Source: Obrimoposthia wandeli (Eukaryota). Taken from it: DNA of 64,000 nt. The stretch is taken from positions 124,001 to 188,000 of the forward strand of contig CDROCS010004085.1 in assembly GCA_977020255.1 (NCBI GenBank), written 5' to 3'. Shown in pieces: positions 25,165-52,824 of this stretch (position 1 is its first letter; each line of letters begins with the position of its first letter). Made by a program: the position numbers and the translations under genes. Below the pieces are notes generated by a model, which worked only from the letters and a program-made list of their open reading frames with translations, did no database searches and had not been told where the DNA came from.

Positions 25165-25195
<31 letters not shown>

Positions 25196-26188: not shown

Positions 26189-26207
26189 GGTGATAATAAT
26201 TCTTATT
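26189..26207. promoter_or_regulatory. Candidate Fur box upstream of the MFS gene
   Basis: TGATAAT-A-ATTCTTA matches the 7-1-7 Fur motif at 12 of 14 positions. Confidence 0.55.
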
Positions 26208-26268
26208 CATTGTTTTGGTGGCAATGAATGGTTACACTCAGCGTTCCTTCTCTTTAGAATGCCTTGTC

Positions 26269-27492
26269 ATGGACGATCACTTAAAAACAAAATCTCGTGT
26301 TTTGCACCTTGCACTACTTATTAATATGTTATCAATTGGTACATTAATGATGGTTATGCCATTAGGTGCAGATTTTGTGAAACACCTGAATATGCAACCT
26401 GAACATATTGGTTATATTAGTGGGGGTGCAACATTTGCTTCTGCATTAGTAGGTTTTTTTCTAGCTCCTTATTTAGATCGATATGATCGTAAGTCTGCAT
26501 TAATATTATTCTTACTGGTTCGTTCTGTCATTATTATTATATGTGGCTTCTCAACAACGCAGAATGAATTATTATTTTGGTTTGTTTTAGCAGGATGCTT
26601 TGCTGGGCCAATAAGTGGTTTAACGATGGCGTCTGTTATTGATATTACAGAAGTAAAAGAACGAGGAAAATCCATTGCGTTTGTTGCCAGTGGTTTTTCA
26701 TTGGCTGCCATTATAATTGTGCCAATTTCGTTAGAATTATCTGCCCATTTCTCATGGCAAGTTACTTTCTTTCTTTTTGGTAGTATAGGAGCCGGCTTTT
26801 CTCTACTTAGTCATTGGTATTTTCCATCGATGGTAGGGCATAAGGCCGTGGGTGATAAGCAACAATCTTCCTCAGGCGGAATGGCTGAAATGATCACAAG
26901 CCCTGTCTTTATGTCTGCATTGAGTATTGTCGGTATTAGCATGTTTGGCCATTTCTTACTGGTTCCAAATCTTTCCACTTTCTTCCAATTCAATCTTCAT
27001 TTTCCACGAGAACAAATCAGTGTGTTGTATTTACTTGGTGGTGTAGCGAGTATTTTTTCGATGCAGTTTTGTGGGCAGATGCTGGATAAGGGCTGGGTAA
27101 CGCAGACAGTATGGGTAACTAGTCTTTTGGTGGCACTAGTAACGTTCATAGGGTTCTTATGGCAAGGAACTTGGCCGTTATATGTTGTGTTTACCTTGTT
27201 CATGGCATCGAGTTCAGCCAGGAGTGCATCTGTTTCAGCAATAACATCGCGTGTTCCATTGCCTCACCAACGAGCGGCCTTTATGTCTTACCAAGGAACG
27301 TTTTCGAACGTGGCGGCAGGTCTTGCGAGTGCCGTTTCATCTCTTTATTTAATATCAGATCCTGCTGGGCGTTTAATTGGGATTGAAACCTTAGCCATGG
27401 TTACTATTGGCTGTGCGCTGATGGTGCCATTTGTGGTAAGCATTTTAATGAGCTTGCTTGTACGACGCCAACAGACAGCCCTTCAATTATAA
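26269..27492 (+). CDS. MFS transporter, probable siderophore exporter
   Basis: About 12 TM segments, motif-A-like LDRYDRK and ERGK loop; first gene of the siderophore locus. Confidence 0.85.
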   Translation: MDDHLKTKSRVLHLALLINMLSIGTLMMVMPLGADFVKHLNMQPEHIGYISGGATFASALVGFFLAPYLDRYDRKSALILFLLVRSVIIIICGFSTTQNELLFWFVLAGCFAGPISGLTMASVIDITEVKERGKSIAFVASGFSLAAIIIVPISLELSAHFSWQVTFFLFGSIGAGFSLLSHWYFPSMVGHKAVGDKQQSSSGGMAEMITSPVFMSALSIVGISMFGHFLLVPNLSTFFQFNLHFPREQISVLYLLGGVASIFSMQFCGQMLDKGWVTQTVWVTSLLVALVTFIGFLWQGTWPLYVVFTLFMASSSARSASVSAITSRVPLPHQRAAFMSYQGTFSNVAAGLASAVSSLYLISDPAGRLIGIETLAMVTIGCALMVPFVVSILMSLLVRRQQTALQL

Positions 27493-27631
27493 TGACGGTT
27501 ATAAGCTATTGTTTTTAATATCACAGGAAAATTTACAGTTGATTAATAGCTTATGAAAAAGAAATAATAAGTCCTTAATTCATAACTGCGATCAATATCT
27601 TGTTTTTAATCATAATGTTCAGAATGCACCA

Positions 27632-27664
27632 TTGACGATGCGAATGATAATGACTATCATTCAC
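27632..27664 (+). promoter_or_regulatory. Sigma70 promoter (TTGACG-N17-TATCAT) overlapped by tandem Fur boxes
   Basis: gcgaatgataatgactatc and gataatgactatcattcac each match GATAATGATAATCATTATC at 15/19. Confidence 0.85.
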
Positions 27665-27683
27665 CAAATTATCGTAATGGAGT

Positions 27684-29633
27684 ATGAACATGTTTCAGCA
27701 TCAGGGAGATAGCCGTTTTGCGCTAACTCAGTTAAATAAAGCGTTTATGGCTATTGGTCTATTATCTTCTTCAATGGTAATGGCAGATACTGCAACTACT
27801 GATGATGTTATGGTCATTACCGCGTCACAAACTAAGCATCCAGAACTTACTGCTCCTGCATCAGTTTCTTATATTACGCGTGAGGAATTGGACAAATTAG
27901 TGGTTAATGATGTGGCAGAAGCCGTGAAGAAGTTACCGGGAATTAATATTAATCCAGGTACACCTTATGGCCGTAATGAGATTAAAATCCGTGGCTTGGA
28001 TTCTGATTACACTCTTCTTTTGATCAACGGCAAACGTACGAGTTCCCGCGATGCGCTGACATCGTCGTACGGTAATGACTTTGATCTTTCAAGTATCCCA
28101 ATGTCTGCGGTTGAGCGTATTGAAGTCATTCGTGGCCCCATGTCATCACTTTATGGTGCTGATGCTCTGGGTGGTGTAGTGAACGTGATTCTCCGCCAAC
28201 CGACAGAACAAACAGAAGGTGCGGTGGGTTATCAATACGAAGGCCCTACGGAAGGTAGCGGTGGTGATGTACACAAATGGAATGTGTATGCTGGCGGTTC
28301 TCTGATACCGGATACATTGCTGGGCAATATTATTATCGAACAGAGTTCTCGTGATGCGTGGCGTACTGACCAATCGTTAAATCCCGATTCTGACGTTCTG
28401 GAAGAGCGTGATGAACTGAATATCTTCTCTAGCTTAAAATGGCTGGCAACTGATCAGCAAGATATTGATCTTGACGTTATTTATAGTAAAGACGATCGTG
28501 ATGCTGATTGGAACAACTGGGGAACGGCGGTGAATAACGTTCAGAAACTTGAACGTATTAATGCCACATTAACCCATAACGGTTACTGGTCAAAGTTTGA
28601 TTCACGAGTGCGTTATAACTACGAAAATTCTGATTTAAAAGATGACTCAGGCCTGAATAAGGGTGTGGGTGATATTACACAGACTAATAATACACTTGAT
28701 GGTCAGCTGTCTGGTTATGTGGGTTCACACATGCTGACGGGCGGTGCGGAGTACCGTGTTACCGATCTGAAGAATAATCTAACACTTTCTAAAGGGTCGG
28801 AAGGTTACAACCAATCCGCGATTTATCTGCAAGATGAGTTTGAAATTGGTGATTTGGCCGTTACTTTAGGCGGCCGATTTGATGACCACGAAGTTTACGG
28901 TGGTGAGTTTAGCCCACGTGCTTATGCGGTTTATAGCATTACAGATAACTGGGTTGTGAAAGGGGGCGTGGGTAAAGCCTTTAAAGCACCGAGCTTGAAT
29001 CAATACAGTGATTCATACGCTGTGCTTGCCTGCCGTGGTGCGTGTTCCGTCGTGGGTAATCCTGACTTGAAAGCTGAAACAGCAATTAGTTATGAGCTTT
29101 CAACGGGCTATAAAGCAGATAGCTGGGGCGCTACAGTAACAGCGTTTAATAACGACATTGATGACATGATCCAAGCAGAGACTTGGGACCGTGTTAAAAA
29201 AGAACTTACGTACTTTAATGTAAAAGAAGCACAGGTGCGTGGTGCTGAGCTGTCAGGTTGGTTTGATGTTACGGATACCGTGAGCCTATCGGCGAACTAT
29301 ATGTATACCGATGCCAAAGACAAGACGACAGACAAAGAGCTGACATTGACGCCGAAAAATACGGCAAATGTTCAAGTTGATTGGCAAATGCTAGAAAATG
29401 TATACACCTATGTGTCTTACCAATACACCGGTGAGCAGTATGTGCGAACTGATGAAAAGTCGGATGGTTATGGCACATTTGATCTAGGCGCACAGTATGA
29501 AGCGGTTAAAAACCTAAACCTGAAATTAGGGGTAACTAATCTTACTGATGAAAAGCGTGATGATGCGGCAGTGAAACATGATTATATCATGAAGAGCCGT
29601 ACGATTTATGCGGGTGCATCTTACGCTTTCTAA
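27684..29633 (+). CDS. TonB-dependent catecholate-siderophore receptor (IrgA/CirA-like)
   Basis: Signal peptide, TonB-box-like DVMVITAS, IERIEVIRGPMSSLYG-type plug motif, GNPDLKAET and C-terminal Phe. Confidence 0.93.
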   Translation: MNMFQHQGDSRFALTQLNKAFMAIGLLSSSMVMADTATTDDVMVITASQTKHPELTAPASVSYITREELDKLVVNDVAEAVKKLPGININPGTPYGRNEIKIRGLDSDYTLLLINGKRTSSRDALTSSYGNDFDLSSIPMSAVERIEVIRGPMSSLYGADALGGVVNVILRQPTEQTEGAVGYQYEGPTEGSGGDVHKWNVYAGGSLIPDTLLGNIIIEQSSRDAWRTDQSLNPDSDVLEERDELNIFSSLKWLATDQQDIDLDVIYSKDDRDADWNNWGTAVNNVQKLERINATLTHNGYWSKFDSRVRYNYENSDLKDDSGLNKGVGDITQTNNTLDGQLSGYVGSHMLTGGAEYRVTDLKNNLTLSKGSEGYNQSAIYLQDEFEIGDLAVTLGGRFDDHEVYGGEFSPRAYAVYSITDNWVVKGGVGKAFKAPSLNQYSDSYAVLACRGACSVVGNPDLKAETAISYELSTGYKADSWGATVTAFNNDIDDMIQAETWDRVKKELTYFNVKEAQVRGAELSGWFDVTDTVSLSANYMYTDAKDKTTDKELTLTPKNTANVQVDWQMLENVYTYVSYQYTGEQYVRTDEKSDGYGTFDLGAQYEAVKNLNLKLGVTNLTDEKRDDAAVKHDYIMKSRTIYAGASYAF

Positions 29634-29660
29634 TAACCATCGTTAACCATGCTTATATAT

Positions 29661-29693
29661 AATAATAAGGGCTGATGTCTAGCCCTTGTTATT
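29661..29693 (+). terminator. Hairpin/terminator after the receptor gene
   Basis: aataataagggct-gatgtct-agcccttgttatt. Confidence 0.7.
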
Positions 29694-29861
29694 TATGGTG
29701 TATATAAAGGCCATAAATAATACCAATCATAATAATAAAAACACTAGTGGCTATGTGATGCATAATCAGCTTTTACGGCTGGATAAATAAAGATATTAAC
29801 TATGTGAAATATTGTCATAGCGAATTATTTTATACCATTTGCGTAAATAGGGAGTTGTGTC

Positions 29862-31061
29862 ATGCAACGAACGCAAAGTGAGAAGTTAACGTTTAGTTTT
29901 GCATCATTCTCACCAAAAACAGAATTTATATTTACATCTGAACACCGTAGTTTAATTGCATCTGGTATAAATCAAACGATTATACAACCTGCTATTGATG
30001 GTGATGAGAATAACAGTTTATTTCAGCGGGCAATTCAACGAGCTTTTTTATTAGAAAAACAAAAAGGAATTAATAACCCGATAATTATCGGTTCTATTCC
30101 TTTTGATGTGAACCAACCATCTTGTTTGTATGTACCGACGGCTTTTGAGTTTATTGACAGACATGCTTTTCAACATGCGACACCAGCTATTTCATTTACA
30201 CCTCCTGCGGTTGAAGTGCTTTCTGCTCGGAGTGTTCCTAATGAACATTCGTTTAAATCTGCTGTCGCTCAAGCAGTGGAGAAGTTTCAGTCTACTAGCC
30301 TTGAAAAAGCCGTGTTATCGCGAGTGTTAAATCTTGAATTGGATGGCAATATTTCTCCTGAGTATGTGCTAAGACGTTTGATGGCACAAAATCCCACGGG
30401 TTATCACTTTTCCATTCCACAAGCGGACGGTTCGATTTTATTAGGGGCCAGCCCTGAATTACTTATTCGTAAGCAGGGGCAACAGTTGTCGTCAAATCCT
30501 TTAGCTGGATCGGCTAAACGTCAACAAACTGAAGCCGATGAATTACGCGTGAGTCAGGCTTTGTTGGCATCCACAAAAGATCGCTATGAACACCGTTTGG
30601 TTATTGATGAAATTCAACGACTCTTGGCTCCTCATTGTGTTGAGTTGCATGTGCCTGATGACCCATCGTTGATTAATACTCCTGCTATGTGGCACTTATC
30701 GACTAAGATTTCAGGCACATTAAAATCGCCTTCTACCAGCGCATTGCAGCTTGCCTGCTTGTTGCATCCAACACCCGCGGTGTGCGGCTTTCCGTTTGAT
30801 TTATCACGCTGTGCAATTAATGAACTGGAGTCGTTTGAACGCGGTATGTTCAGCGGCATGGTGGGTTGGTGTGATGCAGAGGGTAATGGGGAATGGGCAG
30901 TGACCATTCGGTGCGGAAAAGTATTGAATAACACAGTGAGCTTATTTGCAGGTGCTGGCATTGTCGATGCATCGTGTCCGCAATCGGAATGGGCGGAAAC
31001 GGAGGCCAAACTGGGTACCATGCTTAATGCTTTTGGACTGAAAAGTAAGGAATCAGCATGA
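29862..31061 (+). CDS. entC: Isochorismate synthase (EntC/AmoC-like)
   Basis: [27 protein letters not shown] and FAGAGIV chorismate-binding motifs. Confidence 0.93.
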
Positions 31062-32701
31062 CTATTCCGTTTACCCCTTGGCCTGCTGAATTTACTGAAC
31101 GATACATTGAAAAAGGGTATTGGATTGACTTACCGTTGACCGATATTGTGACGCGCCATTGCGTTGATTCAACGTCTGCATCACGCACTGCACTAATTTG
31201 CCACCAGCGTCAGTTTAGCTATGACGAGCTTCATCGCTTGTCGGATACGCTTGCTCATCACTTGCATGATCAAGGTTTTCAAGCGGGTGAAACTGCTGTG
31301 GTGCAGTTACCGAATGTAGCTGAATTTTATATCGTTTTTCTTGCACTATTGAAAGTGGGCATAGTTCCTGTTAATGCGCTATTTAATCATAAACAGCTTG
31401 AACTACGTGCTTATATAGAACAAGTACAGCCTGCTTTGATGGTGGTTTCTAACAGCCATCAACTGTTTCATGACGATAGTTTTGTTACTGAATTAAATGC
31501 CAATACGCCGACGATCCGTCATTGGTTAGTTGAAGGTGAAGCAACATTTGGTACGTCAATAACCGAACTCTTGATGGCTCAGCAGGAAGATCCAAACGAG
31601 GAGGTAGTGGAATTCACATCTACCTCCACTTCTGAAGTGGCTTTCTTTCAGCTCTCCGGTGGCAGTACAGGTACTCCAAAATTGATTCCGCGAACGCACA
31701 ATGATTACTACTATAGTGTCCGTGCCAGCGCTGAAATTTGTCAATTAGATAGCAATACTGTGTATTTGTGCGCATTGCCTGCACCGCATAATTTCTCGCT
31801 TAGCTCGCCAGGGGCATTTGGTGTGTTTTATGTAGGCGGTACTGTGGTGTTGGCTACAGATCCTAGCGCCATGAGCTGTTTTCCATTGATCCATAAGCAT
31901 CGCGTCACTATGACTGCCTTGGTTCCCCCTGCAGTAACATTGTGGTTGCAAGCGGCGAGTGATTATAAACGTCACCTTGTTAGCTTGAATGTGTTGCAAG
32001 TGGGCGGAGCACGTTTGAGCGAATCGTTAGCGAAGCAGATTACTCCCGTTTTAGGGTGCCAGTTACAGCAAGTATTTGGTATGGCCGAAGGCTTGGTGAA
32101 TTACACCCGATTCGATGATGACACCTGGCACGTTTTCAATACCCAAGGTCGTCCAATCAGTAACGATGATGAAGTTAAAATTGTTGATGAACATGGTAAT
32201 GAAGTGCCTGACGGCATAGCGGGAGCGTTACTTACTCGTGGTCCGTATACCTTCCGCGGCTACTTCAATAGCCCAGCCCACAATGCAAATGCTTTTGATG
32301 CCGACGGTTTTTACCGTTCTGGCGATATCGTGAAACGTACTACTACGGGCTACTTGATTGTGGTGGGGCGCGATAAAGATCAGATCAACCGTGGTGGCGA
32401 AAAAATTGCGGCTGAAGAAGTCGAAAATCAATTATTAATCCACGAGGCGGTTACTAACGCAGCCTTGGTTTCGATGCCAGATACCGTAATGGGAGAAAAA
32501 AGCTGTGCCTTTGTGATTACGACTAATCCGGCATTAAAAGCCATCACCCTTCGTAAACATCTTCGCGCCCAAGGCGTTGCAGAATATAAGTTGCCCGACC
32601 GTGTTGAGTTTGTTGCTCACTTACCAATGACCCCAGTCGGGAAAGTCGATAAAAAAAAGTTACGTCAGACCATTCAACAGACATTAATAATTAAAAAATA
32701 A
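31058..32701 (+). CDS. entE: 2,3-dihydroxybenzoate-AMP ligase (EntE/AmoE-like)
   Basis: [48 protein letters not shown] and QINRGGEKI motifs. Confidence 0.95.
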
Positions 32702-32715
32702 AAGGACGTTTAATC

Positions 32716-33588: not shown

Positions 33589-33590
33589 AC

Positions 33591-37585: not shown

Positions 37586-37597
37586 GTAGGATCGATC

Positions 37598-44134: not shown

Positions 44135-46463
44135 TTGTTTTGATGGTTGTCTTGATACTACGTACTGGAAGACGTTATTCGATGGTGTAACTGAGCCGAC
44201 GCATTTTAGTGCGAATAAGGCTGGTACTGCTCCTCTAGAACAACGTGTTGCTAATACAGACACCTTCACGCAGCTACTTACGCACAACCTATCGCCAGAG
44301 TGGGTGGCGATGTTCAATGTTTTTTGTGTCGACGTTGATGTGGATTGCTCAACTTTATTCAGTGCAAGCTGGAATTGGATGTTGTACCAATATAGCGGTG
44401 AATCTGTAGTGACAAGTGGGATGTGCGATATGCCCTGCAAGACGGTGATCCCTACGGTACAGTCATTTTCCGATCGTTCGTTAACAGTGGCGGCATGGTT
44501 GTGTGACGCTCAAGCACAATTGTCGTTATCAAAACAGATGTTATTCCATACGCGTCTGAATCCGACGGCTGATTTGCAGCCACTTAACTGGCTGACCAGC
44601 GTTGTCTCGGTTAAGCATTTAGTGCCACCGTTAGATAATGATGATTGTCCTAATGATGGTGCGAACGACGTTGTTGATAATAATGGCACCTTGATGCCGG
44701 GGACTATTGCTTCAGTATATATTGATAACCAAGATTCATTCACTGGATGGCGGGTACAACTTGCTTATTCGGAGGTGCACTTTTCTGTCGAACAAGCTTC
44801 GTCTTTGCTAGAAGACTGGATAGCGCTATTGACGGGGATCTGTCAGCAGCGATGGTCGACGGTCAATGAATTGTGTGTTGGGCAATGGCAGCCGTCAAAG
44901 GATGCTTCTATTGGGCCAACATCAGATTTACCATCATCTTATAATACATTTTCTGATGAACTGGCATCTGTATTATTAACTGCACTACAGCACGCCGCGC
45001 AAGATGAACGCCCTGCGATTGAATGGCAAGGGGGGACGCTAAGTTACACGGCATTGTTACAGCGTGTCGCGGAGATCCAGAATTTACTGCATCAGCATAA
45101 TATTGAGTGTGGTGATAGGGTTGGGCTACACGTATACCGGCAACCAGACATGATCTCGGCGATGATCGCGTGTCTATTGTCGGGAGTGACATTTGTACCA
45201 TTAGAGCCGACGTTTCCTGCTGATCGTCTGGTAACTATTGAGCAAGAGGCTGGGCTTAAAGCGATTCTCCAAGATACGGCGTTGTCGAGAGCTATTCCTA
45301 TGGTGCCATTTAAGGGGGCTAATGTAGTGTTGTTAGCGGCTGAAAATGTAATGCCTAAGTCGGGGTTAATGCCGAGAGTGTGTGATGGGTTATCATCTGA
45401 TACGCCTGCCTACATTATGTTTACCTCGGGCTCAACAGGGAAACCGAAAGGAGTCGTGATTACTCATCGTGCCTTGTTAATGTTTTTGCAGGGCAGCACT
45501 GATCGTTTGGAATTAGATACGACTACTCGCTGGTTATTGATTACCACCATGGCGTTTGATATAGCCTTATTAGAAATATTCGGACCTTTATGGGTAGGTG
45601 GTTGTGCTGTTTTGATGTCGAGTGATGAGTATCGTGATCCCCATGCGATTAGTGATTACTTAACGGAAGATAATGCCATCACGGTAATGCAAGCAACGCC
45701 TGCATTTTGGCGAATGTTATTGAATACAGGATGGCAGGGTAATCAACAGCTGGTGGCGTTGTGTGGTGGGGAAGCATTAGATAAACCGCTGGCAGAGCAA
45801 TTGGTATTACGAACTCAACGTTTGTGGAATTGTTATGGGCCAACGGAAGCCACGGTATGGTCTTTGATGGCAGAAATTACTGCAGATGCTTTGAACTTGC
45901 CGAGTATCACTTTGCAGCATAGCCTGATTGGTTATACCCATCAGGTGGTAGATGCTGACTTACAGCCTGTTTCGGTGAATATGGTTGGGGAGCTATGTAT
46001 TCAAGGTGAGGCATTGAGTCATGGTTATTGGCAGCGTGATGAGCTAACGGCTCAGCAATTCGTCACTTTGTCGTCGCATCAGGTTCGAAGCTATCGTACG
46101 GGTGATAAAGTGCGGGTGTTAGGGGATGATTGCTATCAATACTTGGGACGGTTTGATGACCAAGTAAAATTGCGTGGTTTTCGGATTGAGCTGGGTGAAA
46201 TTGAAGCTCAGCTTAAGTACCTGACGATGGTCAAAGATGCTGCGGTAAAATTGATCGGAACAGGGGATGAAGCGCAGTTAGTGGCGTTCATAGAAATGAC
46301 AAAAGATACTAGGTTGTCAAAATTAGCGGTGCGCAAAGAACTGCTGAAAACCTTACCCAGTTATATGGTGCCAAACCGTTTCGTGGTGCTTGAACTGTTA
46401 CCAAAAACAGGAAGTGGTAAAGTTGATCGCAAGCAACTTTATATCAAGAAATCTTATATCTAG
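44124..46463 (+). CDS. NRPS-like protein: partial C domain + Gly-type A domain, no carrier domain (AmoH-like)
   Basis: N-terminal part lacks HHxxxDG; A3 FTSGSTGKPKG; code DILQLGCVWK; ORF ends just after A10 (GKVDRK). Confidence 0.85.
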   Translation: MQADCFDGCLDTTYWKTLFDGVTEPTHFSANKAGTAPLEQRVANTDTFTQLLTHNLSPEWVAMFNVFCVDVDVDCSTLFSASWNWMLYQYSGESVVTSGMCDMPCKTVIPTVQSFSDRSLTVAAWLCDAQAQLSLSKQMLFHTRLNPTADLQPLNWLTSVVSVKHLVPPLDNDDCPNDGANDVVDNNGTLMPGTIASVYIDNQDSFTGWRVQLAYSEVHFSVEQASSLLEDWIALLTGICQQRWSTVNELCVGQWQPSKDASIGPTSDLPSSYNTFSDELASVLLTALQHAAQDERPAIEWQGGTLSYTALLQRVAEIQNLLHQHNIECGDRVGLHVYRQPDMISAMIACLLSGVTFVPLEPTFPADRLVTIEQEAGLKAILQDTALSRAIPMVPFKGANVVLLAAENVMPKSGLMPRVCDGLSSDTPAYIMFTSGSTGKPKGVVITHRALLMFLQGSTDRLELDTTTRWLLITTMAFDIALLEIFGPLWVGGCAVLMSSDEYRDPHAISDYLTEDNAITVMQATPAFWRMLLNTGWQGNQQLVALCGGEALDKPLAEQLVLRTQRLWNCYGPTEATVWSLMAEITADALNLPSITLQHSLIGYTHQVVDADLQPVSVNMVGELCIQGEALSHGYWQRDELTAQQFVTLSSHQVRSYRTGDKVRVLGDDCYQYLGRFDDQVKLRGFRIELGEIEAQLKYLTMVKDAAVKLIGTGDEAQLVAFIEMTKDTRLSKLAVRKELLKTLPSYMVPNRFVVLELLPKTGSGKVDRKQLYIKKSYI

Positions 46464-46518
46464 GTATCTAGTATGATGTAACGTTAAAGATCGATGATGA
46501 TAGATGCGCATCATAATG

Positions 46519-46551
46519 AAAAGCCGATTTTTTAATAACAATCGGCTTTTT
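46519..46551. terminator. Bidirectional terminator between convergent genes
   Basis: aaaagccgatt...aatcggcttttt. Confidence 0.85.
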
Positions 46552-46607
46552 ATCGCGTTATATATCACGTTATATTGTGCTCTAGAATCAAATTCTACTT
46601 GAGAACA

Positions 46608-47564
46608 TTATGGCGAAAGTGGTTCTGCATCCGGTTTATTAACCAGCTTGACGATGTCTTGCATTACGCTCAATGCGGCGAGAGGTCCACCTACAGAGGT
46701 CCACAATGACCCATCAACAGCCTCAAAACGTTTAGTTTGGATAGAACTGAGTTGTTTAAATGCAGGGCTTGATTCAGCTTGTTTCATCGCATCGACCGCA
46801 TCGCCTGATGTACTGAGTGTACCTATGACCATCCAATCACCATCTAAGACATTTAATGCTTCTAAACTCAATGATAGCGAATGTGTGTGCCCAGGATCTT
46901 GCTGGTTGGCAGGACGTGTCATACCGAGATCTGCGATGACTTGGCTGGCAAAAGCATCTTTGAACATGTAGGCCGGTCCTTTCGGATTCCAGCGTACGAT
47001 ACTGATGGTTTGCCCGGCTTTATCACCTATGTCAGCTTTTGATTGCTGCACGGCCTGCTGGTAACGCGCCATGAATGCCGTGGCTTCTTTTTGACGATTG
47101 AGAATATCGGCTGTGCGGTGAAAAGTGTCTTTCCACGGTTCGCCTCGCTTAAATGTAACAACTGTTGGTGCAATTTCATTCAATAATGCCAATACCTCTG
47201 GTCGGTTAGGCGTTGTTAGAATGAGGTCTGGTTCGAGTTCTAGAATGGTTTCCATATTGGGACGACTAAGGTCACCGACAATCTTAATGTCTTGTTGAAT
47301 AGCTGATTGGAGGTAGCGCGGTAATGTTTGCTGCCCACGACCATTCACCGTGCCGATAGGTGTAAGTCCCAATGCCAAGGTGCTATCGAGATCGATTTCA
47401 CTCAAGGTGATCACCCGCTTGGGCGCGGCGGGTATTTCAATCATTTTACCGTAGACATCATGAATGCTACGCATGGCTTCATTGCTCACAGTTTGGCTGT
47501 GGGCGGTAAAAGCGGCAGTAATACATAACACCGAGAGTGCGACCTTACGAAGAAACATCATCAT
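46608..47564 (-). CDS. Iron-siderophore ABC transporter periplasmic binding protein
   Basis: Signal peptide; PKRVITL, ALGLTPIG and PNMETILELEPDLIL class III SBP motifs. Confidence 0.92.
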   Translation of the reverse strand: MMMFLRKVALSVLCITAAFTAHSQTVSNEAMRSIHDVYGKMIEIPAAPKRVITLSEIDLDSTLALGLTPIGTVNGRGQQTLPRYLQSAIQQDIKIVGDLSRPNMETILELEPDLILTTPNRPEVLALLNEIAPTVVTFKRGEPWKDTFHRTADILNRQKEATAFMARYQQAVQQSKADIGDKAGQTISIVRWNPKGPAYMFKDAFASQVIADLGMTRPANQQDPGHTHSLSLSLEALNVLDGDWMVIGTLSTSGDAVDAMKQAESSPAFKQLSSIQTKRFEAVDGSLWTSVGGPLAALSVMQDIVKLVNKPDAEPLSP

Positions 47565-47604
47565 CCCTTATATTAATCGATAGATTTGGATAATATATGA
47601 GAAA

Positions 47605-47662
47605 GAGATTGATAACTATTTTTATTTAGATCTATTCATAGGTTAGGCTCATTGTTATCATG
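47605..47662. promoter_or_regulatory. Candidate Fur boxes in the divergent SBP/permease promoter
   Basis: gagattgataactattttt (13/19 to consensus) and a weaker ctcattgttatcatg. Confidence 0.55.
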
Positions 47663-47727
47663 CGTCCTTACAAGGATTACACGTGTCATTAGCACGTGAG
47701 TAAAATTGATTAAAGGGAGTTAACGTT

Positions 47728-48744
47728 GTGACAAAATCGCACCTTATTGGCCTCGGAAGTTGCTTGGCAGCAGTCTTCTTTTTAGTGTTGTTGTCGTTGT
47801 CGGTTGGGGCTGGTATCTATGGGTTTAGTGATGCATTCGGTTATCTAACAGGCTCTCCATTACTGGTATCAGACGCGCAACTGGCCATGGTGATGGATAC
47901 TTTACGCATTCCACGCACCTTGTGTGCTGTTATTGTCGGAGTTAGTTTAGCGTTGGCAGCTTCATTACTGCAAAGTGCAACGCGTAACCCACTGGCAGAG
48001 CCGGGTCTGCTTGGTGTTAATGCAGGTGCAGTTCTGGGTTTAGTTATCGGGCTTACTTATTTTGATGTGGAATCGACCCAAGGCTATTTAGTGTGGTCTG
48101 GGCTAGGTGCGCTGGCAGGTAATACTGTGGTGTTGATCATCGGCCACCTTGTGGGGAAATCGCATCCATTAAAATTGATTCTCGTTGGTGTTGCTCTTAG
48201 TGCTACGTTTGGCGGCCTATCGAATTATGTGTTGTTGTCGAACCAAGTGGTACTTGATCAATTTCGCTTTTGGAATCTAGGTTCATTGGCTGCTGCTGAA
48301 ATGGGGACGATGCTGATGATCTTGCCATTCTTAGTGGTGGCCGTGGTATTAACTTTTGCTTTAACTCGTCAATTAACCTTAATGCAATTAGGTGAACAGC
48401 AAGCCAAATCATTGGGTATTAATACCAATGTGGTGCGTATTGGGGTGCTGATTGCTTCTACCTTATTTACAGCTTGTGCCATCTCGGTAGCGGGCCCTAT
48501 CAGTTTTGTCGGATTTCTTTCTGCTTATTGTGCACGTATGGTTGAACCTGTCGCTTTGTCATTACAAGTGGTTTTTTCGGCACTTTTTGGTGTTATTTTT
48601 CTCTTTATTGCCGATATTCTTGCACGTTGGTTAATTCAACCGTTTGAAATGCCGAATGGGGTGATCTTAGCCTTGATCGGGGCGCCCGTCTTAATTGCAG
48701 TGGTGCACCGCGGTGGTTTCCGCACTTTGTTAGCTGTGAAATAG
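47728..48744 (+). CDS. Iron-siderophore ABC permease (FecCD family)
   Basis: RIPRTL, QSATRNPLAEPGLLG and LGEQQAKSLG (EAA-like) motifs. Confidence 0.93.
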   Translation: MTKSHLIGLGSCLAAVFFLVLLSLSVGAGIYGFSDAFGYLTGSPLLVSDAQLAMVMDTLRIPRTLCAVIVGVSLALAASLLQSATRNPLAEPGLLGVNAGAVLGLVIGLTYFDVESTQGYLVWSGLGALAGNTVVLIIGHLVGKSHPLKLILVGVALSATFGGLSNYVLLSNQVVLDQFRFWNLGSLAAAEMGTMLMILPFLVVAVVLTFALTRQLTLMQLGEQQAKSLGINTNVVRIGVLIASTLFTACAISVAGPISFVGFLSAYCARMVEPVALSLQVVFSALFGVIFLFIADILARWLIQPFEMPNGVILALIGAPVLIAVVHRGGFRTLLAVK

Positions 48745-48754
48745 GAGCGCTTTC

Positions 48755-49870
48755 ATGTCACACGAACATTCACTTGCTACTGAGCAAGCAGCACCGCCTT
48801 TATCTTCGTTAACATTATCTTCAACCTCACCTGTAATAACGCCTACGGGGAAGTGGCGGTTACAGTGTGGGCAATATAACCTTTTGGTTGAAAAGCGTGC
48901 GGTTATCGTCGGTGTCATATTAATGGTCATGTTGCTGGTGGGCATCGTGATTGCGGTTAGCGTTGGCTCTGCAAAATTAACGCCGTTGTCGGCATTGCAA
49001 GCTTTCCTTGGCGATGCATCGCGCATGGTTAATATCATGGTATTTAAAATCCGATTACCACGTGTGGTTGCGGTCGTGGTTGCAGGTGCAGCACTCGGGC
49101 TATCCGGTTGCTTAATTCAAACTTTGGTGCGTAACCGTTTGGCGACACCCGATATGATAGGGGTTAACGAAGGGGCCACACTCGCCATTACCTTCTTTAC
49201 CTTGTATATCACCGTAGGTGCATGGCCATGGTGGGCTGCGCCTATTGGTGCCATGTTCGCAGCCGTGATTTTGTTTTTGTTGTGTAAGAACCCTGGTGAG
49301 CAAGGGTATATGTTCGTTGTTATTGGTATCGGGGTGTCCGAGTTGATGCGAGCGGTCGGCGAATTCATAATGTCGACAGAATCTATTGTGCATGTCAGCA
49401 GTGTGTATATGTGGAGTATGGGAAATTTTGTCGGGCAAGGCTATACGACAAGCTTACCTGTAGTCATGCTTTTGTTGTTGTTATGCCCCTTTATTGTTTA
49501 CTTTTCTCGGCAACTCAATGTGTTGCGATTAGGTGTTAGTACGGCGCAAAGCTTGGGTATTAATGTGAATCGAGTGCAGCTTAGCATTTTGATGCTTGCC
49601 ATCATGGTGGCGGCACTTGGTACGGCTATTGGCGGGCCGATTGTCTTTATTGCGATGGCTGCCCCGATCTTGGCGTCGTATTGCGTCAAGAATCGCATTG
49701 TTCCACTGTGGAGTGCTGCGCTGCTAGGGGCGCTGTTATTGTTATTCAGTGATACCTTAGTAAGAGTATTGGCGGATCCGCATGAAGTTGCCACGGGGAT
49801 TATGACCCGTATTTTAGGCGGTATTATGCTATTAGTTTTCTTATTACGTGACAAAGGAAGTGCGGACTAA
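48755..49870 (+). CDS. Iron-siderophore ABC permease (FecCD family)
   Basis: RLPRVV, QTLVRNRLATPDMIG and AQSLGINV motifs. Confidence 0.93.
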   Translation: MSHEHSLATEQAAPPLSSLTLSSTSPVITPTGKWRLQCGQYNLLVEKRAVIVGVILMVMLLVGIVIAVSVGSAKLTPLSALQAFLGDASRMVNIMVFKIRLPRVVAVVVAGAALGLSGCLIQTLVRNRLATPDMIGVNEGATLAITFFTLYITVGAWPWWAAPIGAMFAAVILFLLCKNPGEQGYMFVVIGIGVSELMRAVGEFIMSTESIVHVSSVYMWSMGNFVGQGYTTSLPVVMLLLLLCPFIVYFSRQLNVLRLGVSTAQSLGINVNRVQLSILMLAIMVAALGTAIGGPIVFIAMAAPILASYCVKNRIVPLWSAALLGALLLLFSDTLVRVLADPHEVATGIMTRILGGIMLLVFLLRDKGSAD

Positions 49871-50661
49871 TGACTTTATTAACGATGAGCAATATTGGTT
49901 TTTCTTATGATGAAAAGTCCGTGTTCCATAATGTATCTATACAGCTCAATAGAGGGAAGTTGGTAGGGATTGTTGGGCCCAATGGTGGTGGAAAATCGAC
50001 CTTACTGAAATTGATTGCCAAACAAATGGAACCCCATAGTGGTGATATTATCCTTGATGGAAAGCCGTTGTCGCAGTATTCGATGAAAGCGCTAGCCAAG
50101 CAGGTTGCTTATTTGCCGCAACACCCACTAAGCCCTGCGGGTATTACAGTAGAACAGTTGGTGCAATATGGACGTCACCCTCATCAAAGTTGGTTTAATC
50201 AATGGAACGACAAAGATGCCGAGCAAGTAAACCAAGCCATTGAGTTGATGCAGTTGTCAGACATTTTGCAACAACCAGTAACTAGCCTGTCTGGCGGTCA
50301 ACGGCAGCGTGCTTGGCTAGCAATGATACTGGCACAAGACACCGATTTAATTTTATTAGATGAACCGACCAGCGCGTTAGATATTGGTCACCAAATTGAG
50401 GTGATGGAAAGTATTAGCCATATGGTAGTGTCTGGTAAAACAGTGGTATTGGTGATTCATGATTTAGCCGCGGCAGCTCGTTATTGCGATGAACTAATTG
50501 CCATTGGTAATAATACGGTGGTGGCATCGGGTAGCGTGAATGAGGTGGTAACGAAGACCTTGATTGATGAATTATACGATACAAATGTAGATATATTATA
50601 TGCCCCGTTTGATCAGGCGCCTGTGATTGTGCCGCGTCGTAAGGTGCATACGAAGCAGTAG
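49870..50661 (+). CDS. Iron-siderophore ABC ATPase (FepC-like)
   Basis: GPNGGGKST, LSGGQRQR and LLDEPTSALD motifs. Confidence 0.95.
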   Translation: MTLLTMSNIGFSYDEKSVFHNVSIQLNRGKLVGIVGPNGGGKSTLLKLIAKQMEPHSGDIILDGKPLSQYSMKALAKQVAYLPQHPLSPAGITVEQLVQYGRHPHQSWFNQWNDKDAEQVNQAIELMQLSDILQQPVTSLSGGQRQRAWLAMILAQDTDLILLDEPTSALDIGHQIEVMESISHMVVSGKTVVLVIHDLAAAARYCDELIAIGNNTVVASGSVNEVVTKTLIDELYDTNVDILYAPFDQAPVIVPRRKVHTKQ

Positions 50662-50795
50662 TAATATCGATATGTCGCTATTGTTACTCGCAATCTTGAT
50701 CTTGTTGTTTATCCAGAATAAAAACCTTACCCACATAACCGATATAATCTTGAAAAGTTATGCGAGCAAGGTCTTTTCTATGATGTTTCTAGAGC

Positions 50796-51878
50796 TTAGC
50801 CGTGCATGCTGATTGGCGAGAGCGATTGATACAATGTGCGGCGAGTCGCAATGGCAGCGGAAAATTGATTAAGTAATATTTCTGTATCGCTCCAGTTGAT
50901 ACAGGCATCCGTTACCGATTGTCCGTAAGTCATATTGGCACTTATTGCTTGATTACCTTCCTCAAAGAAACTTTCCACCATAATTGACGTTATTGCTTGT
51001 TCGCCCTGAGACAATTGTTCACATAACGATTGTGCGACAACAAGTTGGTTTTTATGGCGCTTTTGGCTGTTTCCATGGCTGCAATCTACCATAATACTTA
51101 CTGGTAACTTGGCTTGGTATAGCGCTTTGCTGGCAGCTTGAATATGGCTAGGGCTGTAGTTAGGTTCTTGCCCACCACGTAGGATGATATGACAATCGGC
51201 ATTACCTGAACTTTCCACTGCATATAAATGTCCATCGTGTCCTGTAATGGTATACAAGTGAGGGGATTGGCTAGAAAGAATGGCATCTGTCGCAATACGA
51301 ATGTTACCATCGGTGCCGTTTTTGAAACCGACGGGGCAGGGTAAGCCCGAGGTTAACTGTCGGTGAACTTGTGATTCTGTAGTGCGGGCGCCAATGGCTC
51401 CCCAGCTCATGAGGTCGGCCAAATATAGAAAGCTGGTATTATCCAAAAATTCGGTTGAAGTTGGTACACCAAGTTCATTGATAGCGAGTACTAACTGACG
51501 CGCTGTTGTTAACCCAGTAATAAGGTCATTACTGTTGTCGAGATGCGGATCGAATATTAAGCCTTTCCAGCCTGTTGTTGTTCGGGGTTTTTCGAAATAC
51601 GTTCGCATCACAATATGTAAGTGTTCACTATACTGTTCGACCAGTGGCTTAAGCTGCTTTGCGTATGCCAGTGCTGCATCTGGGTCATGAATTGAGCATG
51701 GACCAATTACGACCAGAAGCCGATCATCTTTGCCATGTAAAATATCCCTCACATTATTACGTGATTCCATTATGTGGTGTTCAGTGCCGGCCGTACACGG
51801 GTAGTCACTGAGCAGTTCTGCCGGTGAAGGAAGCCGACGGCATGTTGTCGTTCTCATCACTGATGGGTGAATAGCCAT
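50796..51878 (-). CDS. Class I-alpha DAHP synthase, cluster-associated
   Basis: IGPCSIHD, YFEKPRT, IGARTTESQ, GFKNGTDG, LRGG and DCSHGNS motifs. Confidence 0.95.
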   Translation of the reverse strand: MAIHPSVMRTTTCRRLPSPAELLSDYPCTAGTEHHIMESRNNVRDILHGKDDRLLVVIGPCSIHDPDAALAYAKQLKPLVEQYSEHLHIVMRTYFEKPRTTTGWKGLIFDPHLDNSNDLITGLTTARQLVLAINELGVPTSTEFLDNTSFLYLADLMSWGAIGARTTESQVHRQLTSGLPCPVGFKNGTDGNIRIATDAILSSQSPHLYTITGHDGHLYAVESSGNADCHIILRGGQEPNYSPSHIQAASKALYQAKLPVSIMVDCSHGNSQKRHKNQLVVAQSLCEQLSQGEQAITSIMVESFFEEGNQAISANMTYGQSVTDACINWSDTEILLNQFSAAIATRRTLYQSLSPISMHG

Positions 51879-51949
51879 GTTAAATTCCTTTTTGATCATT
51901 AGTATAATGACATCACTCTCACGTCTTAGTACGTAGTGTTTTTGTTGTG

Positions 51950-52771
51950 TTAGCTATCCATAACGGTATGACGGTTCTGATGGTATGCATCTTCATCTTT
52001 GCCATCGCGCCAATAAGGCACGGCATAAATAGCGGTTCGATCAACCTCCATGTTACGGCGAACGTGATTACGCAATGGCACTACGATATTTTCTTCGCCG
52101 CCAAACCAAAAATAACTATTGATGTTTTCCATACCACGTTGCAAAAAAGGCACTGTAAGTTTGTCACTGTCGGCAGAGTTACCGATCACCCATGTGAGTG
52201 TTACCTTATCAGGTACCGGCAGATCTTGAATGGCATCAGAGGTGGGCACTAAAAGTGCAATATGACCGCCACTATCAGCTGGCATGTCTTCAATCATTGC
52301 ACTGATGGCGGGCAAGGCAGTTAGATCGCCAGCCATGTAATAATGCCGCGCTGGTTGAAGCATCGGATGCGGACCTCCGGGGCCAGAAATTGCGAGTACA
52401 TCACCTTCTTGTGCCTGTTGAGCAAAACGAGTTGCAGGGCCGCTGTCTGCATGTAGAGCAAAATCAATGTCGATTTCACAAGCGTTGCGACGAAAAGCTC
52501 GTACACTGAATGTACGAATCAGTGGTTTGTCTTCTGGGACTAACCAGCGCGGCCCTTTGTCGGTTAATGTAGGAAGCACTGGTACCGTTTGTTCACCATG
52601 CGGCATCATTATTTTGATGTGAGCGCCTCCACTTACATCTGGGTAATCAGCTAATAAAGGGCTGGTAAAGCAAATACGGCGCAGTGCGGGCGTAATATCG
52701 ATAACGTGTTTGACCGATACTAAGAAAGGACGAACGGGTTGACGGGGTAAAGGTGTACCTGACTGTGACAT
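51950..52771 (-). CDS. Siderophore-interacting protein (ViuB-like FAD reductase)
   Basis: RTFSVR, IDIDFALH, GPATRFA, GDLTALPAI and YWRDG motifs. Confidence 0.93.
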   Translation of the reverse strand: MSQSGTPLPRQPVRPFLVSVKHVIDITPALRRICFTSPLLADYPDVSGGAHIKIMMPHGEQTVPVLPTLTDKGPRWLVPEDKPLIRTFSVRAFRRNACEIDIDFALHADSGPATRFAQQAQEGDVLAISGPGGPHPMLQPARHYYMAGDLTALPAISAMIEDMPADSGGHIALLVPTSDAIQDLPVPDKVTLTWVIGNSADSDKLTVPFLQRGMENINSYFWFGGEENIVVPLRNHVRRNMEVDRTAIYAVPYWRDGKDEDAYHQNRHTVMDS

Positions 52772-52799
52772 GAGTATACTTGCTCTCGCTAATCTTAAT

Positions 52800-52824
52800 A
52801 AAAACCATTATCATTTGCATTATA
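52800..52824. promoter_or_regulatory. Fur box upstream of the SIP-DAHP synthase unit
   Basis: Minus strand gcaaatgataatggttttt and overlapping tataatgcaaatgataatg, each 13/19 to consensus. Confidence 0.7.

What the first reader, a model, noticed from the sequence alone, without database searches (positions are those of the whole stretch)
26189..52824. Complete amonabactin-type (amoCEBFAGH-like) siderophore locus in a Photobacterium-like genome
Seen: the gene order is isochorismate synthase, DHB ligase, isochorismatase-ArCP, C-A-T NRPS, entA, C-A-T-E-C-T NRPS, then a C*-A protein. Hand-read A-domain codes are DAEDIGTVVK (Lys type), a hydrophobic code in the epimerising module, and DILQLGCVWK (Gly type). 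Established: Aeromonas amonabactins are bis-catecholates of DHB, two L-Lys, a D-Phe/D-Trp and an optional Gly, made by amoCEBFAGH. Inference: this strain makes amonabactin or a close analogue and has its own exporter, receptor, ABC importer, reductase and precursor enzyme. I know of no such system in Photobacterium, but I cannot search.
Basis: partly seen in the sequence, partly recalled or inferred. Interest (0 to 1): 0.88.

Follow-up and report, generated by a model that had tools for sequence, protein, structure and literature searches.

The report
Amonabactin-type siderophore locus in Photobacterium
This is a real iron-scavenging (catechol siderophore) gene cluster of the amonabactin type known from Aeromonas, sitting in a Photobacterium contig; it is an ordinary new member of a known kind, already visible in other Photobacterium genomes, and in this assembly the enzyme gene that should switch the synthetases on is broken.

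Summary
Window 26215-52771 carries 15 intact genes: an MFS exporter, a TonB receptor, amoC-E-B-F-A-G-H, an ABC importer, a DAHP synthase and a SIP reductase.

The seven biosynthetic genes are collinear with Aeromonas hydrophila amoCEBFAGH at 48-63% identity. Domain order is the same. The A-domain codes of AmoF (Lys) and AmoH (Gly) are identical to Aeromonas, and AmoG matches at 9 of 10 positions. The receptor is 53% identical to the one inside the A. salmonicida amonabactin cluster (FstC).

The novelty claim fails. The same cluster is in P. frigidiphilum (92-99%), P. indicum, P. kasasachensis and strain OFAV2-7, and a second lineage is in P. halotolerans and P. ganghwense. An antiSMASH amonabactin hit was published for P. 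arenosum. No chemical proof in the genus was found.

- AmoH's extra N-terminus is a half condensation domain without the catalytic motif.
- The Sfp/EntD-type PPTase gene that precedes the exporter in every relative is reduced here to its last ~50 codons. No public run listed holds the replacing 685 bases, so this is either strain-specific loss or an assembly fault.

The contig lies in a 1.35 Gb mixed assembly. Earlier scan notes covered only this window.

The parts
25346..26030 (+). 685-nt segment that replaces the intergenic region and 5' ~540 nt of the PPTase gene found in relatives; weak PPTase-like patch at 25828-25955; stops in every frame
26032..26181 (+). 3' remnant (last ~50 codons) of the Sfp/EntD/PfaE-type phosphopantetheinyl transferase gene
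   Evidence: 90% aa identity to P. frigidiphilum PPTase residues 181-230; all comparators lose homology upstream of 26031
26215..27492 (+). MFS exporter (MxcK/EntS-like)
   Evidence: PF07690 E 4.9e-36; best NCBIfam hit MxcK at 153 bits, below its cut-off; 45-52% identical to the MFS gene in Aeromonas and Pectobacterium clusters
27640..27664 (.). two overlapping Fur-box-like sites upstream of the receptor gene (15/19 and 16/19 to the 19-bp consensus; the 16/19 site is the best match in the 64-kb window)
27684..29633 (+). TonB-dependent catecholate siderophore receptor, probable FstC orthologue
   Evidence: Plug + barrel; closest NCBIfam model CirA; 53% identity over 98% of its length to the receptor inside the A. 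salmonicida amonabactin cluster (PMC2556355)
29862..31061 (+). amoC-like isochorismate synthase
   Evidence: PF00425; TIGR00543 at 301.9 bits, above its cut-off; 48% to A. hydrophila AmoC
31058..32701 (+). amoE-like 2,3-DHB-AMP ligase
   Evidence: NF008192 905.6 bits (cut-off 783) and TIGR02275 827.9 bits (cut-off 723.55); 60% to AmoE
32716..33588 (+). amoB-like isochorismatase fused to an aryl carrier protein
   Evidence: PF00857 + PF00550; carrier Ser motif present; 62% to AmoB
33552..36809 (+). amoF-like NRPS, C-A(Lys)-T
   Evidence: Pfam C, A, T; code DAEDIGTVVK identical to Aeromonas and Pectobacterium; 52% to AmoF; best NCBIfam hit MxcG at 970 bits, below its cut-off of 2300
36803..37585 (+). 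amoA-like 2,3-dihydro-2,3-DHB dehydrogenase
   Evidence: NF006074 399.5 bits (cut-off 312); 63% to AmoA
37598..44134 (+). amoG-like NRPS, docking-C-A-T-E-C-T, no TE
   Evidence: Pfam; motif positions; 49% over the full length to A. hydrophila AmoG; tree
44124..46463 (+). amoH-like protein: ~300-aa C-terminal half of a condensation domain without HHxxxDG, then A(Gly), no carrier
   Evidence: Pfam; code DILQLGCVWK = Aeromonas AmoH; residues 306-776 are 52% identical to AmoH; model and Foldseek; dN/dS 0.24 for the extension against 0.10 for the A domain
46608..47564 (-). periplasmic siderophore-binding protein
   Evidence: PF01497; 56-59% to the Aeromonas cluster gene
47728..48744 (+). FecCD-type permease 1
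   Evidence: PF01032; ~72% to Aeromonas
48755..49870 (+). FecCD-type permease 2
   Evidence: PF01032; ~67% to Aeromonas
49870..50661 (+). ABC transporter ATPase
   Evidence: PF00005; 65-68% to Aeromonas
50796..51899 (-). cluster-linked DAHP synthase (AroH-like)
   Evidence: TIGR00034 482.7 bits and NF009396 481.2 bits, both above cut-off; conserved at this place in P. frigidiphilum, P. indicum and P. kasasachensis, and next to amoC in A. schubertii
51950..52771 (-). siderophore-interacting (ViuB/SIP-type) ferric reductase
   Evidence: PF08021 + PF04954
52794..52824 (.). Fur-box-like sites (14/19, 13/19, 13/19) in the promoter region of the SIP gene

Best explanation
The locus is a member of the amonabactin (amoCEBFAGH) family of catecholate siderophore systems, on a Vibrionaceae branch of that family. 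It sits in a Photobacterium about 94% identical in DNA to P. frigidiphilum.

Pathway (inferred from family knowledge unless marked shown):
- The DAHP synthase feeds chorismate.
- AmoC, the AmoB isochorismatase and AmoA make 2,3-DHB.
- AmoE loads DHB on the AmoB aryl carrier.
- AmoF (C-A-T, Lys code, MxcG-like) acylates lysine with DHB and is used twice.
- AmoG module 1 (C-A-T-E) adds an aromatic residue and epimerises it.
- AmoG module 2 (C-T) has no A domain. It is charged in trans with glycine by AmoH.
- There is no thioesterase, as in Aeromonas.

The expected products are amonabactin-like bis-catecholate peptides (2 DHB, 2 Lys, optional Gly, D-Phe/Trp).

Export is by the MFS pump. Uptake is by an FstC-like receptor and the ABC importer. 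Iron release is by the SIP reductase. Expression is probably Fur-controlled.

Shown here: gene content, orthology, domain order, catalytic motifs, A-domain codes and purifying selection.

Open: whether this strain can make holo-synthetases, because the adjacent Sfp/EntD/PfaE-type PPTase gene is only a remnant in the assembly.
For: Gene order and domains.

The A. hydrophila amoCEBFAGH locus was fetched. Pairwise identities are C 48, E 60, B 62, F 52, A 63, G 49 (full length) and H 52% (A domain).

Stachelhaus codes: AmoF DAEDIGTVVK and AmoH DILQLGCVWK are identical to Aeromonas. AmoG is DAMMAGMVTK against DAMMGGMVTK.

Catalytic His motifs and carrier serines are present in all domains.

dN/dS is 0.04-0.24 in every domain against P. 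indicum.

The AmoG tree places the window inside a fully supported Vibrionaceae + Motilimonas clade. Its sister is Pectobacterium/Brenneria + Halopseudomonas + Aeromonas proteins, which NCBI names AmoG.

The transport genes are orthologous to those of the A. salmonicida cluster that holds FstC (PMC2556355).

The best Fur-box match of the whole window lies upstream of the receptor gene.

An AmoG mutant of A. hydrophila makes no amonabactin (PMC11861348 citing Esmaeel 2016).
Against: No chemistry exists for any Photobacterium in the searched literature.

Identity to the characterised Aeromonas enzymes is only about 50%.

AmoG position 299 differs (Ala for Gly). The E domain reads NHxxxD instead of HHxxxD. 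The second carrier reads LAINSL instead of GVDS.

AmoH has an extra half C domain that Aeromonas lacks.

The PPTase gene is degraded in this assembly. The only 4PPT_N-type PPTase in the whole 1.35 Gb assembly lies on a contig of another organism.
Confidence: 0.82

Rival explanations
1. The cluster is of the amonabactin type but inactive in this particular strain. Its Sfp/EntD/PfaE-type PPTase has been lost, so the aryl and peptidyl carriers stay in the apo form.
For: Only the last ~50 codons of the PPTase survive (26032-26181). The 685 nt upstream are 59% identical to the P. frigidiphilum equivalent (shuffled 52%). They carry stops in all frames and give no Pfam hit. Eight comparator sequences carry an intact 230-aa PPTase gene at this place, and all eight lose homology with the window at exactly 26031. 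P. frigidiphilum has only this one Sfp-type PPTase besides AcpS. The one 4PPT_N hit in the assembly lies on a Colwellia/Psychromonas-like contig.
Against: All 15 other genes are intact, including 1085-aa and 2178-aa ORFs. The same organism also keeps an intact 2585-aa pfaA, which needs the same kind of PPTase. That combination is hard to square with such heavy decay of the PPTase. Run X1 holds 98% of the amoG words. It has a contig identical to 26031-26147 that then runs 641 nt unlike the window, which is the length expected for an intact gene. No run was listed that holds the window's 685-nt segment. Other ACPS-family hits in the assembly were not assigned to organisms.
Confidence: 0.3
2. The break in the PPTase gene at 26031 is an assembly fault: a chimeric join or a bad consensus next to the rRNA/tRNA repeats. 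The real organism would then have an intact, fully functional cluster.
For: The X1 contig diverges from the window at exactly 26031 and bridges to the tRNA region with 641 nt, against 642 nt in P. frigidiphilum. The window's segment was found in no listed run, while the adjacent amoG was found in 20. The segment has nearly the canonical length and is weakly collinear with the canonical sequence. The contig belongs to a 1.35 Gb mixed assembly. X1 shows two co-occurring variants a few percent apart.
Against: 59% identity is far below ordinary read noise. The rest of the contig is clean, with long ORFs intact. It is not known whether X1 is the source sample. The tool warns that holes in contig coverage prove nothing.
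Confidence: 0.4
3. The Photobacterium branch makes a distinct analogue rather than the four canonical amonabactins, for example with a different preference among aromatic or hydrophobic D-residues, or a different use of glycine.
For: Clade-specific changes are conserved across the four 74-94% identical orthologues. They are AmoG code position 299 Ala instead of Gly, ICST instead of ILPT at the 278 region, E-domain NHWVID, carrier 2 LAINSL, and the half-C extension on AmoH. About 50% overall divergence from Aeromonas.
Against: Nine of ten AmoG code positions and all ten in AmoF and AmoH are unchanged. The catalytic second His and the carrier Ser are kept. Pectobacterium also differs at one position.
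Confidence: 0.2
4. It belongs to another characterised DHB-lysine pathway (myxochelin, azotochelin/protochelin, or chrysobactin type) rather than amonabactin.
For: The best NCBIfam model for AmoF is MxcG (970 bits) and for the exporter MxcK.
Against: Both scores are far below the curated cut-offs (2300 and 525). AmoF lacks the MxcG reductase domain: it matches model positions 4-1049 of 1442. AmoG and AmoH have full-length orthologues only in amo clusters. There is no TE-ending two-module synthetase of the chrysobactin type.
Confidence: 0.03

Closest known systems
Aeromonas amonabactin system amoCEBFAGH with FstC and its ABC importer (A. hydrophila AHA_2473-2479; A. salmonicida ASA_1838-1851)
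   Same: Same seven genes in the same order. Same domain architecture (C-A-T; C-A-T-E-C-T; trans-acting A). No TE. Identical Lys and Gly codes and 9/10 of the aromatic code. Orthologous MFS, receptor, binding protein, two permeases and ATPase.
   Different: 48-63% identity only. AmoH is 779 aa here against 514 aa, because of an N-terminal half C domain. E motif is NH instead of HH. Carrier 2 motif is AINS instead of VDS. The transport genes are arranged on both sides of the synthetase genes. DAHP synthase and SIP reductase are inside the locus, as in A. schubertii but not A. hydrophila.
Unstudied orthologous clusters in P. frigidiphilum JCM 12947, P. indicum ATCC 19614, P. kasasachensis and Photobacterium sp. 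OFAV2-7
   Same: Same genes in the same order, with the half-C AmoH. P. frigidiphilum and P. indicum also share the downstream flank (tag, CDF). Identities are 92-99% (P. frigidiphilum), 77-97% (P. indicum) and 61-90% (P. kasasachensis).
   Different: They have an intact 230-aa PPTase gene directly upstream of the exporter; the window has a remnant.
Pectobacterium/Brenneria 'amonabactin P 750' clusters reported by antiSMASH (PMC10991766)
   Same: Same seven genes plus MFS and receptor. AmoH is also extended (700-704 aa). Codes are DAEDIGTVVK, DAMLGGMVTK and DILQLGCIWK.
   Different: No ABC importer, DAHP synthase or SIP next to it. The extension is shorter and barely alignable.
Myxochelin synthetase MxcG
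   Same: The C-A(Lys)-T core of AmoF is its best curated match; both attach DHB to lysine.
   Different: AmoF has no terminal reductase and scores below the cut-off. The rest of the pathway differs.

Membership tests
Amonabactin (amoCEBFAGH) biosynthetic gene cluster | Seven genes in the order isochorismate synthase, DHB-AMP ligase, isochorismatase-ArCP, NRPS, DHB dehydrogenase, NRPS, A-domain protein | tested here: met
   against the A. hydrophila locus L001
Amonabactin (amoCEBFAGH) biosynthetic gene cluster | Full-length orthology of each protein to AmoC/E/B/F/A/G/H | tested here: met
   48-63% identity over 93-100% of length, with AmoH matching over its A domain. The AmoG tree places the window within the family that includes the NCBI-named AmoG proteins.
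Amonabactin (amoCEBFAGH) biosynthetic gene cluster | Domain architecture AmoF C-A-T; AmoG C-A-T-E-C-T with an A-less last module; AmoH free-standing A; no TE | tested here: met
   One variation: AmoH carries an added non-catalytic half C domain.
Amonabactin (amoCEBFAGH) biosynthetic gene cluster | A-domain specificity codes for Lys, aromatic (Phe/Trp) and Gly as in Aeromonas | tested here: met
   AmoF 10/10, AmoH 10/10, AmoG 9/10. Codes were read by motif anchoring, not with NRPSpredictor.
Amonabactin (amoCEBFAGH) biosynthetic gene cluster | Product is amonabactin P693/P750/T732/T789 | not testable with these tools
   Needs LC-MS. No report for Photobacterium was found.
Amonabactin uptake (FstC receptor) | Orthologue of the receptor encoded in the A. 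salmonicida amonabactin cluster | tested here: met
   53% identity over 98% of length to the receptor in L011. That receptor is taken to be FstC from its location, as stated in PMC2556355. Ligand specificity was not tested.
Functional NRPS system (any) | An Sfp/EntD-type PPTase available to convert carriers to the holo form | tested here: not met
   The adjacent PPTase is a remnant. No other 4PPT_N-type gene is attributable to this organism. This may be an assembly fault. Other ACPS hits were not assigned.
Myxochelin (MxcG) pathway | C-A-T-Reductase synthetase passing the NF038078 cut-off | tested here: not met
   970 bits against a cut-off of 2300. The match ends at model position 1049 of 1442, so there is no reductase.
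Enterobactin (EntF) pathway | C-A(Ser)-T-TE synthetase passing the NF007605 cut-off | tested here: not met
   397 bits against a cut-off of 2400. There is no TE and the code is Lys.

The most novel reading that the evidence does not exclude
The cold-water Photobacterium branch (P. frigidiphilum, P. indicum, P. kasasachensis and this contig) may make a new amonabactin congener. Its half-C/A form of AmoH may preserve an intermediate step in how the glycine A domain was split out of the last module. The half C domain would then serve as the docking platform that lets the free A domain find the orphan carrier on AmoG.
Probability: 0.2. Interest if true: 0.45.

Novelty: new member of a known kind. 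Interest (0 to 1): 0.3.

Why it matters
It extends a siderophore family studied only in Aeromonas, where it is a virulence-linked system and a target for Trojan-horse conjugates, to cold and deep-sea Vibrionaceae. It also shows that the family is old and widespread in Gammaproteobacteria rather than an Aeromonas speciality.

Practical value:
- The cultivable type strains P. frigidiphilum JCM 12947 and P. indicum ATCC 19614 are ready test organisms for the first chemical proof in the genus.
- The extended AmoH offers a natural case for studying how a trans-acting A domain recognises an A-less module.
- The broken PPTase warns against reading 'complete cluster' as 'producer' from a contaminant contig in a large mixed assembly.

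Tried and rejected
- NCBIfam has no Amo-specific models. The NRPSs match only generic, MxcG or EntF models below their cut-offs, so membership had to rest on a fetched Aeromonas locus.
- The Esmaeel 2016 paper with the biosynthetic model is not held. The statement that amoH deletion leaves only the two glycine-free forms is from my memory of its abstract.
- BLASTP of the AmoH extension against AmoG's second C domain found nothing, so there is no evidence that it is a recent copy of that domain.
- I asked whether the 685-nt segment is plain read noise of the canonical sequence. Global identity is 59% against 52% for shuffles, which is too low for ordinary noise.
- I looked for the missing PPTase 5' half or a substitute elsewhere in the assembly. 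The only hit is a Colwellia/Psychromonas-like contig (C5092) that carries a second catecholate cluster.
- A broad literature search with five loose terms returned mostly irrelevant papers.
- I did not run complex prediction, because no binding claim is made.


Full report
**What is there.**

The window carries an rRNA operon with tRNAs at 19455-25225. After it come 15 intact genes between 26215 and 52771. Pfam and NCBIfam identify them as follows.

| Coordinates | Strand | Gene product |
|---|---|---|
| 26215-27492 | + | MFS exporter |
| 27684-29633 | + | TonB-dependent receptor, closest to CirA |
| 29862-31061 | + | isochorismate synthase |
| 31058-32701 | + | 2,3-DHB-AMP ligase (above two equivalog cut-offs) |
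| 32716-33588 | + | isochorismatase-ArCP |
| 33552-36809 | + | C-A-T NRPS |
| 36803-37585 | + | 2,3-dihydro-DHB dehydrogenase (above cut-off) |
| 37598-44134 | + | 2178-aa NRPS: three condensation-family domains, one A domain, two carriers |
| 44124-46463 | + | 779-aa protein: weak partial condensation hit, then an A domain |
| 46608-47564 | - | periplasmic binding protein |
| 47728-48744, 48755-49870 | + | two FecCD permeases |
| 49870-50661 | + | ABC ATPase |
| 50796-51899 | - | DAHP synthase (above the aroFGH and AroH cut-offs) |
| 51950-52771 | - | SIP-type reductase |

**Is it the amonabactin type?**

I fetched the A. hydrophila locus through a protein that NCBI names AmoG. Its seven genes have the same order and sizes. 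Pairwise identities to the window are AmoC 48, AmoE 60, AmoB 62, AmoF 52, AmoA 63, AmoG 49 (end to end) and AmoH 52% (A domain only).

I read the Stachelhaus positions by anchoring on the A4, A5 and A10 motifs and checked them in an alignment of nine AmoG orthologues.

| Protein | Window | Aeromonas | Pectobacterium |
|---|---|---|---|
| AmoF | DAEDIGTVVK | same | same |
| AmoH | DILQLGCVWK | same | DILQLGCIWK |
| AmoG | DAMMAGMVTK | DAMMGGMVTK | DAMLGGMVTK |

The condensation and epimerisation His motifs and the carrier serines are all present. None of the loci has a thioesterase.

The transport genes are orthologous too. A. salmonicida ATCC 33658 carries, next to amoH, the binding protein (56%), ATPase (67%), permeases (67% and 72%), receptor (53% over 98% of its length) and MFS (46%). 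The A449 genome paper states that the FstC receptor gene lies within this cluster, ASA_1838-1851 (PMC2556355). FstC is the amonabactin transporter (PMC10253897 and PMC8840927). A. schubertii even has the DAHP synthase and SIP genes next to amoC.

**Rival pathways.**

Curated rival families fail. MxcG scores 970 bits against a cut-off of 2300 and the reductase is missing. EntF scores 397 against 2400.

**How it most likely works.**

This part rests on established knowledge of the family. From my own recollection, the Aeromonas products contain two DHB, two Lys, an optional Gly and a C-terminal D-Phe or D-Trp. The arithmetic agrees: 2 DHB + 2 Lys + Phe minus 4 water gives 693.7, and adding Gly gives 750.8.

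- DHB is made by AmoC, AmoB and AmoA, and loaded by AmoE on the AmoB carrier.
- AmoF loads lysine and acylates it with DHB, and is used twice.
- AmoG module 1 activates the aromatic residue and epimerises it.
- AmoG's last module is C-T without an A domain. AmoH supplies glycine to it in trans.

An AmoG mutant of A. hydrophila makes no amonabactin (PMC11861348 citing Esmaeel 2016). That an amoH deletion leaves only the two glycine-free forms is my recollection of that abstract; the paper is not held.

The best match to the 19-bp Fur consensus in the whole 64-kb window (16/19, with an overlapping 15/19) lies just upstream of the receptor gene. Weaker ones lie upstream of the SIP, MFS and amoC genes and in the divergent importer promoter.

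**What differs from Aeromonas.**

The AmoH of the window has about 300 extra N-terminal residues. Pfam gives a sub-threshold condensation hit covering model positions 194-276 of 456 (23.6 bits, cut-off 30.6). The extension has no HHxxxDG motif.

An AlphaFold model built on 13 homologues has modest confidence (pLDDT 60.5, pTM 0.67). Its 50 best PDB matches are nevertheless all condensation-family domains, at E about 1e-8 and probability 1.0.

The extension is present in P. frigidiphilum (94%), P. indicum (69%) and P. kasasachensis (42%). A shorter form occurs in Motilimonas and Pectobacterium. It is absent in Aeromonas.

It evolves faster than the A domain but is still constrained: dN/dS is 0.24 against 0.10 versus P. 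indicum. That fits a structural or docking role.

The Photobacterium branch also shares three changes, all conserved across orthologues 74-94% identical and under purifying selection:
- E-domain motif FNHWVID in place of FHHLVID; the second His, which I recall to be the catalytic one, is kept.
- Carrier-2 motif LAINSL in place of GVDS (the serine is kept).
- Ala for Gly at AmoG code position 299.

These changes leave room for an analogue but do not argue strongly for one.

**Who else has it.**

A scan of species-representative genomes and two protein searches find the cluster in:
- P. frigidiphilum JCM 12947 (AmoG 93%), P. indicum ATCC 19614 (87%), P. kasasachensis and strain OFAV2-7 (74%);
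- Motilimonas (56%) and many Pectobacterium species and Brenneria (52-54%);
- P. halotolerans, P. ganghwense, strain Hal280 and Salinivibrio (52-54%);
- Halopseudomonas, Stutzerimonas and Pseudomonas, and essentially all Aeromonas.

In a maximum-likelihood tree of AmoG, the window sits in a fully supported Photobacterium group. That group lies inside a Vibrionaceae + Motilimonas clade (100/99). Its sister is Pectobacterium/Brenneria + Halopseudomonas + Aeromonas. So this is not a recent transfer from Aeromonas.

P. frigidiphilum and P. indicum share the downstream flank (tag, CDF transporter), so the chromosomal place is conserved.

**Published record.**

The cluster type has been reported by antiSMASH for P. 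arenosum WH24 ('amonabactin P 750', 85%; PMC9200695), Pectobacterium betavasculorum (PMC10991766) and Stutzerimonas (PMC10165715). I found no chemical identification of amonabactin from any Photobacterium. The novelty claim therefore falls to 'new member of a known kind'.

**The organism.**

The window is part of a 550-kb contig (C4085) in a 1.35 Gb, 6912-contig assembly. That is far too large for a bacterium, so the Photobacterium was co-assembled with a much larger genome.
- Ten kb upstream of the window matches P. frigidiphilum at 94% and P. indicum at 91% DNA identity.
- Other bacterial contigs are present. One is a Colwellia/Psychromonas-like contig with a second catecholate cluster. Several others carry PUFA synthase genes.
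- DNA nearly identical or related to amoG occurs in runs labelled food, seawater, cold seep, invertebrate gut and sediment metagenomes.

**The PPTase problem.**

In P. frigidiphilum the only Sfp-type PPTase, besides AcpS, lies directly upstream of the exporter gene. It has 230 aa with 4PPT_N and ACPS domains. The same holds for P. indicum, P. kasasachensis, OFAV2-7 and four metagenome contigs. Its 90% cluster includes P. profundum proteins and one that a source names PfaE, the activator of the PUFA synthase.

In the window only residues ~181-230 survive (26032-26181, 90% identical). All eight comparators lose DNA homology at exactly 26031.

The 685 nt upstream have these properties:
- They are single-copy in the assembly.
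- They are 59% identical to the canonical 642 nt in a global alignment, against 52% for shuffles. One 128-nt patch reaches 72-74%.
- They have stops in every frame and no Pfam hit.

The whole assembly has a single 4PPT_N match, on the contig of the other organism.

Yet the same Photobacterium keeps an intact 2585-aa pfaA (93% to P. frigidiphilum) and all amo genes. That is odd if its only activating PPTase had decayed this far.

Run X1 holds 98% of the amoG words. It has an 874-nt contig identical to 26031-26147 that then continues for 641 nt unlike the window before reaching the tRNA region. This is the length expected for an intact gene. No run was listed for the 685-nt segment itself.

I cannot tell whether X1 is the source sample. 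So the lesion is either a real strain-specific replacement or a local assembly fault, and I rate the two about equally. This changes 'complete locus, this strain makes amonabactin' into 'complete except for its activating enzyme, activity in this strain open'.

**Verdict.**

The family assignment is well supported. The product is probably amonabactin or a near analogue. The claim of novelty in the genus is not supported. The feature is an ordinary, if neat, new member of a known siderophore family, with two small points of interest: the half-C AmoH and the broken PPTase.

Noticed in passing
window 25346-26181: The Sfp/EntD/PfaE-type PPTase gene that precedes the cluster in all relatives is reduced to its last ~50 codons. 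The replacing 685 nt occur in no listed public run. A near-identical run has a contig with 641 different bases there.
   Followed up: yes
whole assembly (G000); window = C4085:124001-188000: The 'genome' is a 1.35 Gb, 6912-contig mixed assembly. The window's 550-kb contig is a Photobacterium about 94% identical to P. frigidiphilum. At least one other marine bacterium (Colwellia/Psychromonas-like, contig C5092) is present. Several other contigs carry PUFA synthase genes, among them C253, which is at least 2.98 Mb long.
   Followed up: partly
L093/L099 (G000:C5092:50000-70414): A second catecholate siderophore cluster (amoB-like, entA-like, EntD-type PPTase and a large NRPS ORF over 1397 aa) lies on a contig of another organism in the same assembly.
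   Followed up: partly
L018 (Stutzerimonas), L044 (Pseudomonas peli), L042 (A. schubertii), L048 (A. diversa): In these lineages AmoG is only about 1520-1530 aa (C-A-T-E) and lacks the terminal C-T. The Gly-type AmoH A domain is still present, and it is unclear which carrier it charges there.
   Followed up: no
window 25173-25344; L089 (reverse strand) 1-382: A tRNA-derived module downstream of the last tRNA gene is present in three partial or complete copies in P. frigidiphilum at the equivalent place (72-97% identity to the window copy). It resembles the tRNA-linked module noted elsewhere on this contig by the first stage.
   Followed up: no
L109 (G000:C5581:10749-18359): An intact pfaA (omega-3 PUFA synthase, 2585 aa, 4752 bits to TIGR02813) lies on another contig of the same Photobacterium (93% DNA identity to P. 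frigidiphilum).
   Followed up: partly
window 37598-37765 (AmoG residues 4-55): A TubC_N-type docking domain sits at the N-terminus of AmoG (25 bits, just under the cut-off of 26). It is also flagged in the Aeromonas and Pectobacterium orthologues and suggests a docking contact with AmoF.
   Followed up: no
window 43830-44134 and AmoG residue ~1270: Motif changes specific to the Photobacterium clade: carrier 2 reads LAINSL instead of GVDS, and the E domain reads FNHWVID instead of FHHLVID. Both are conserved in four orthologues.
   Followed up: yes
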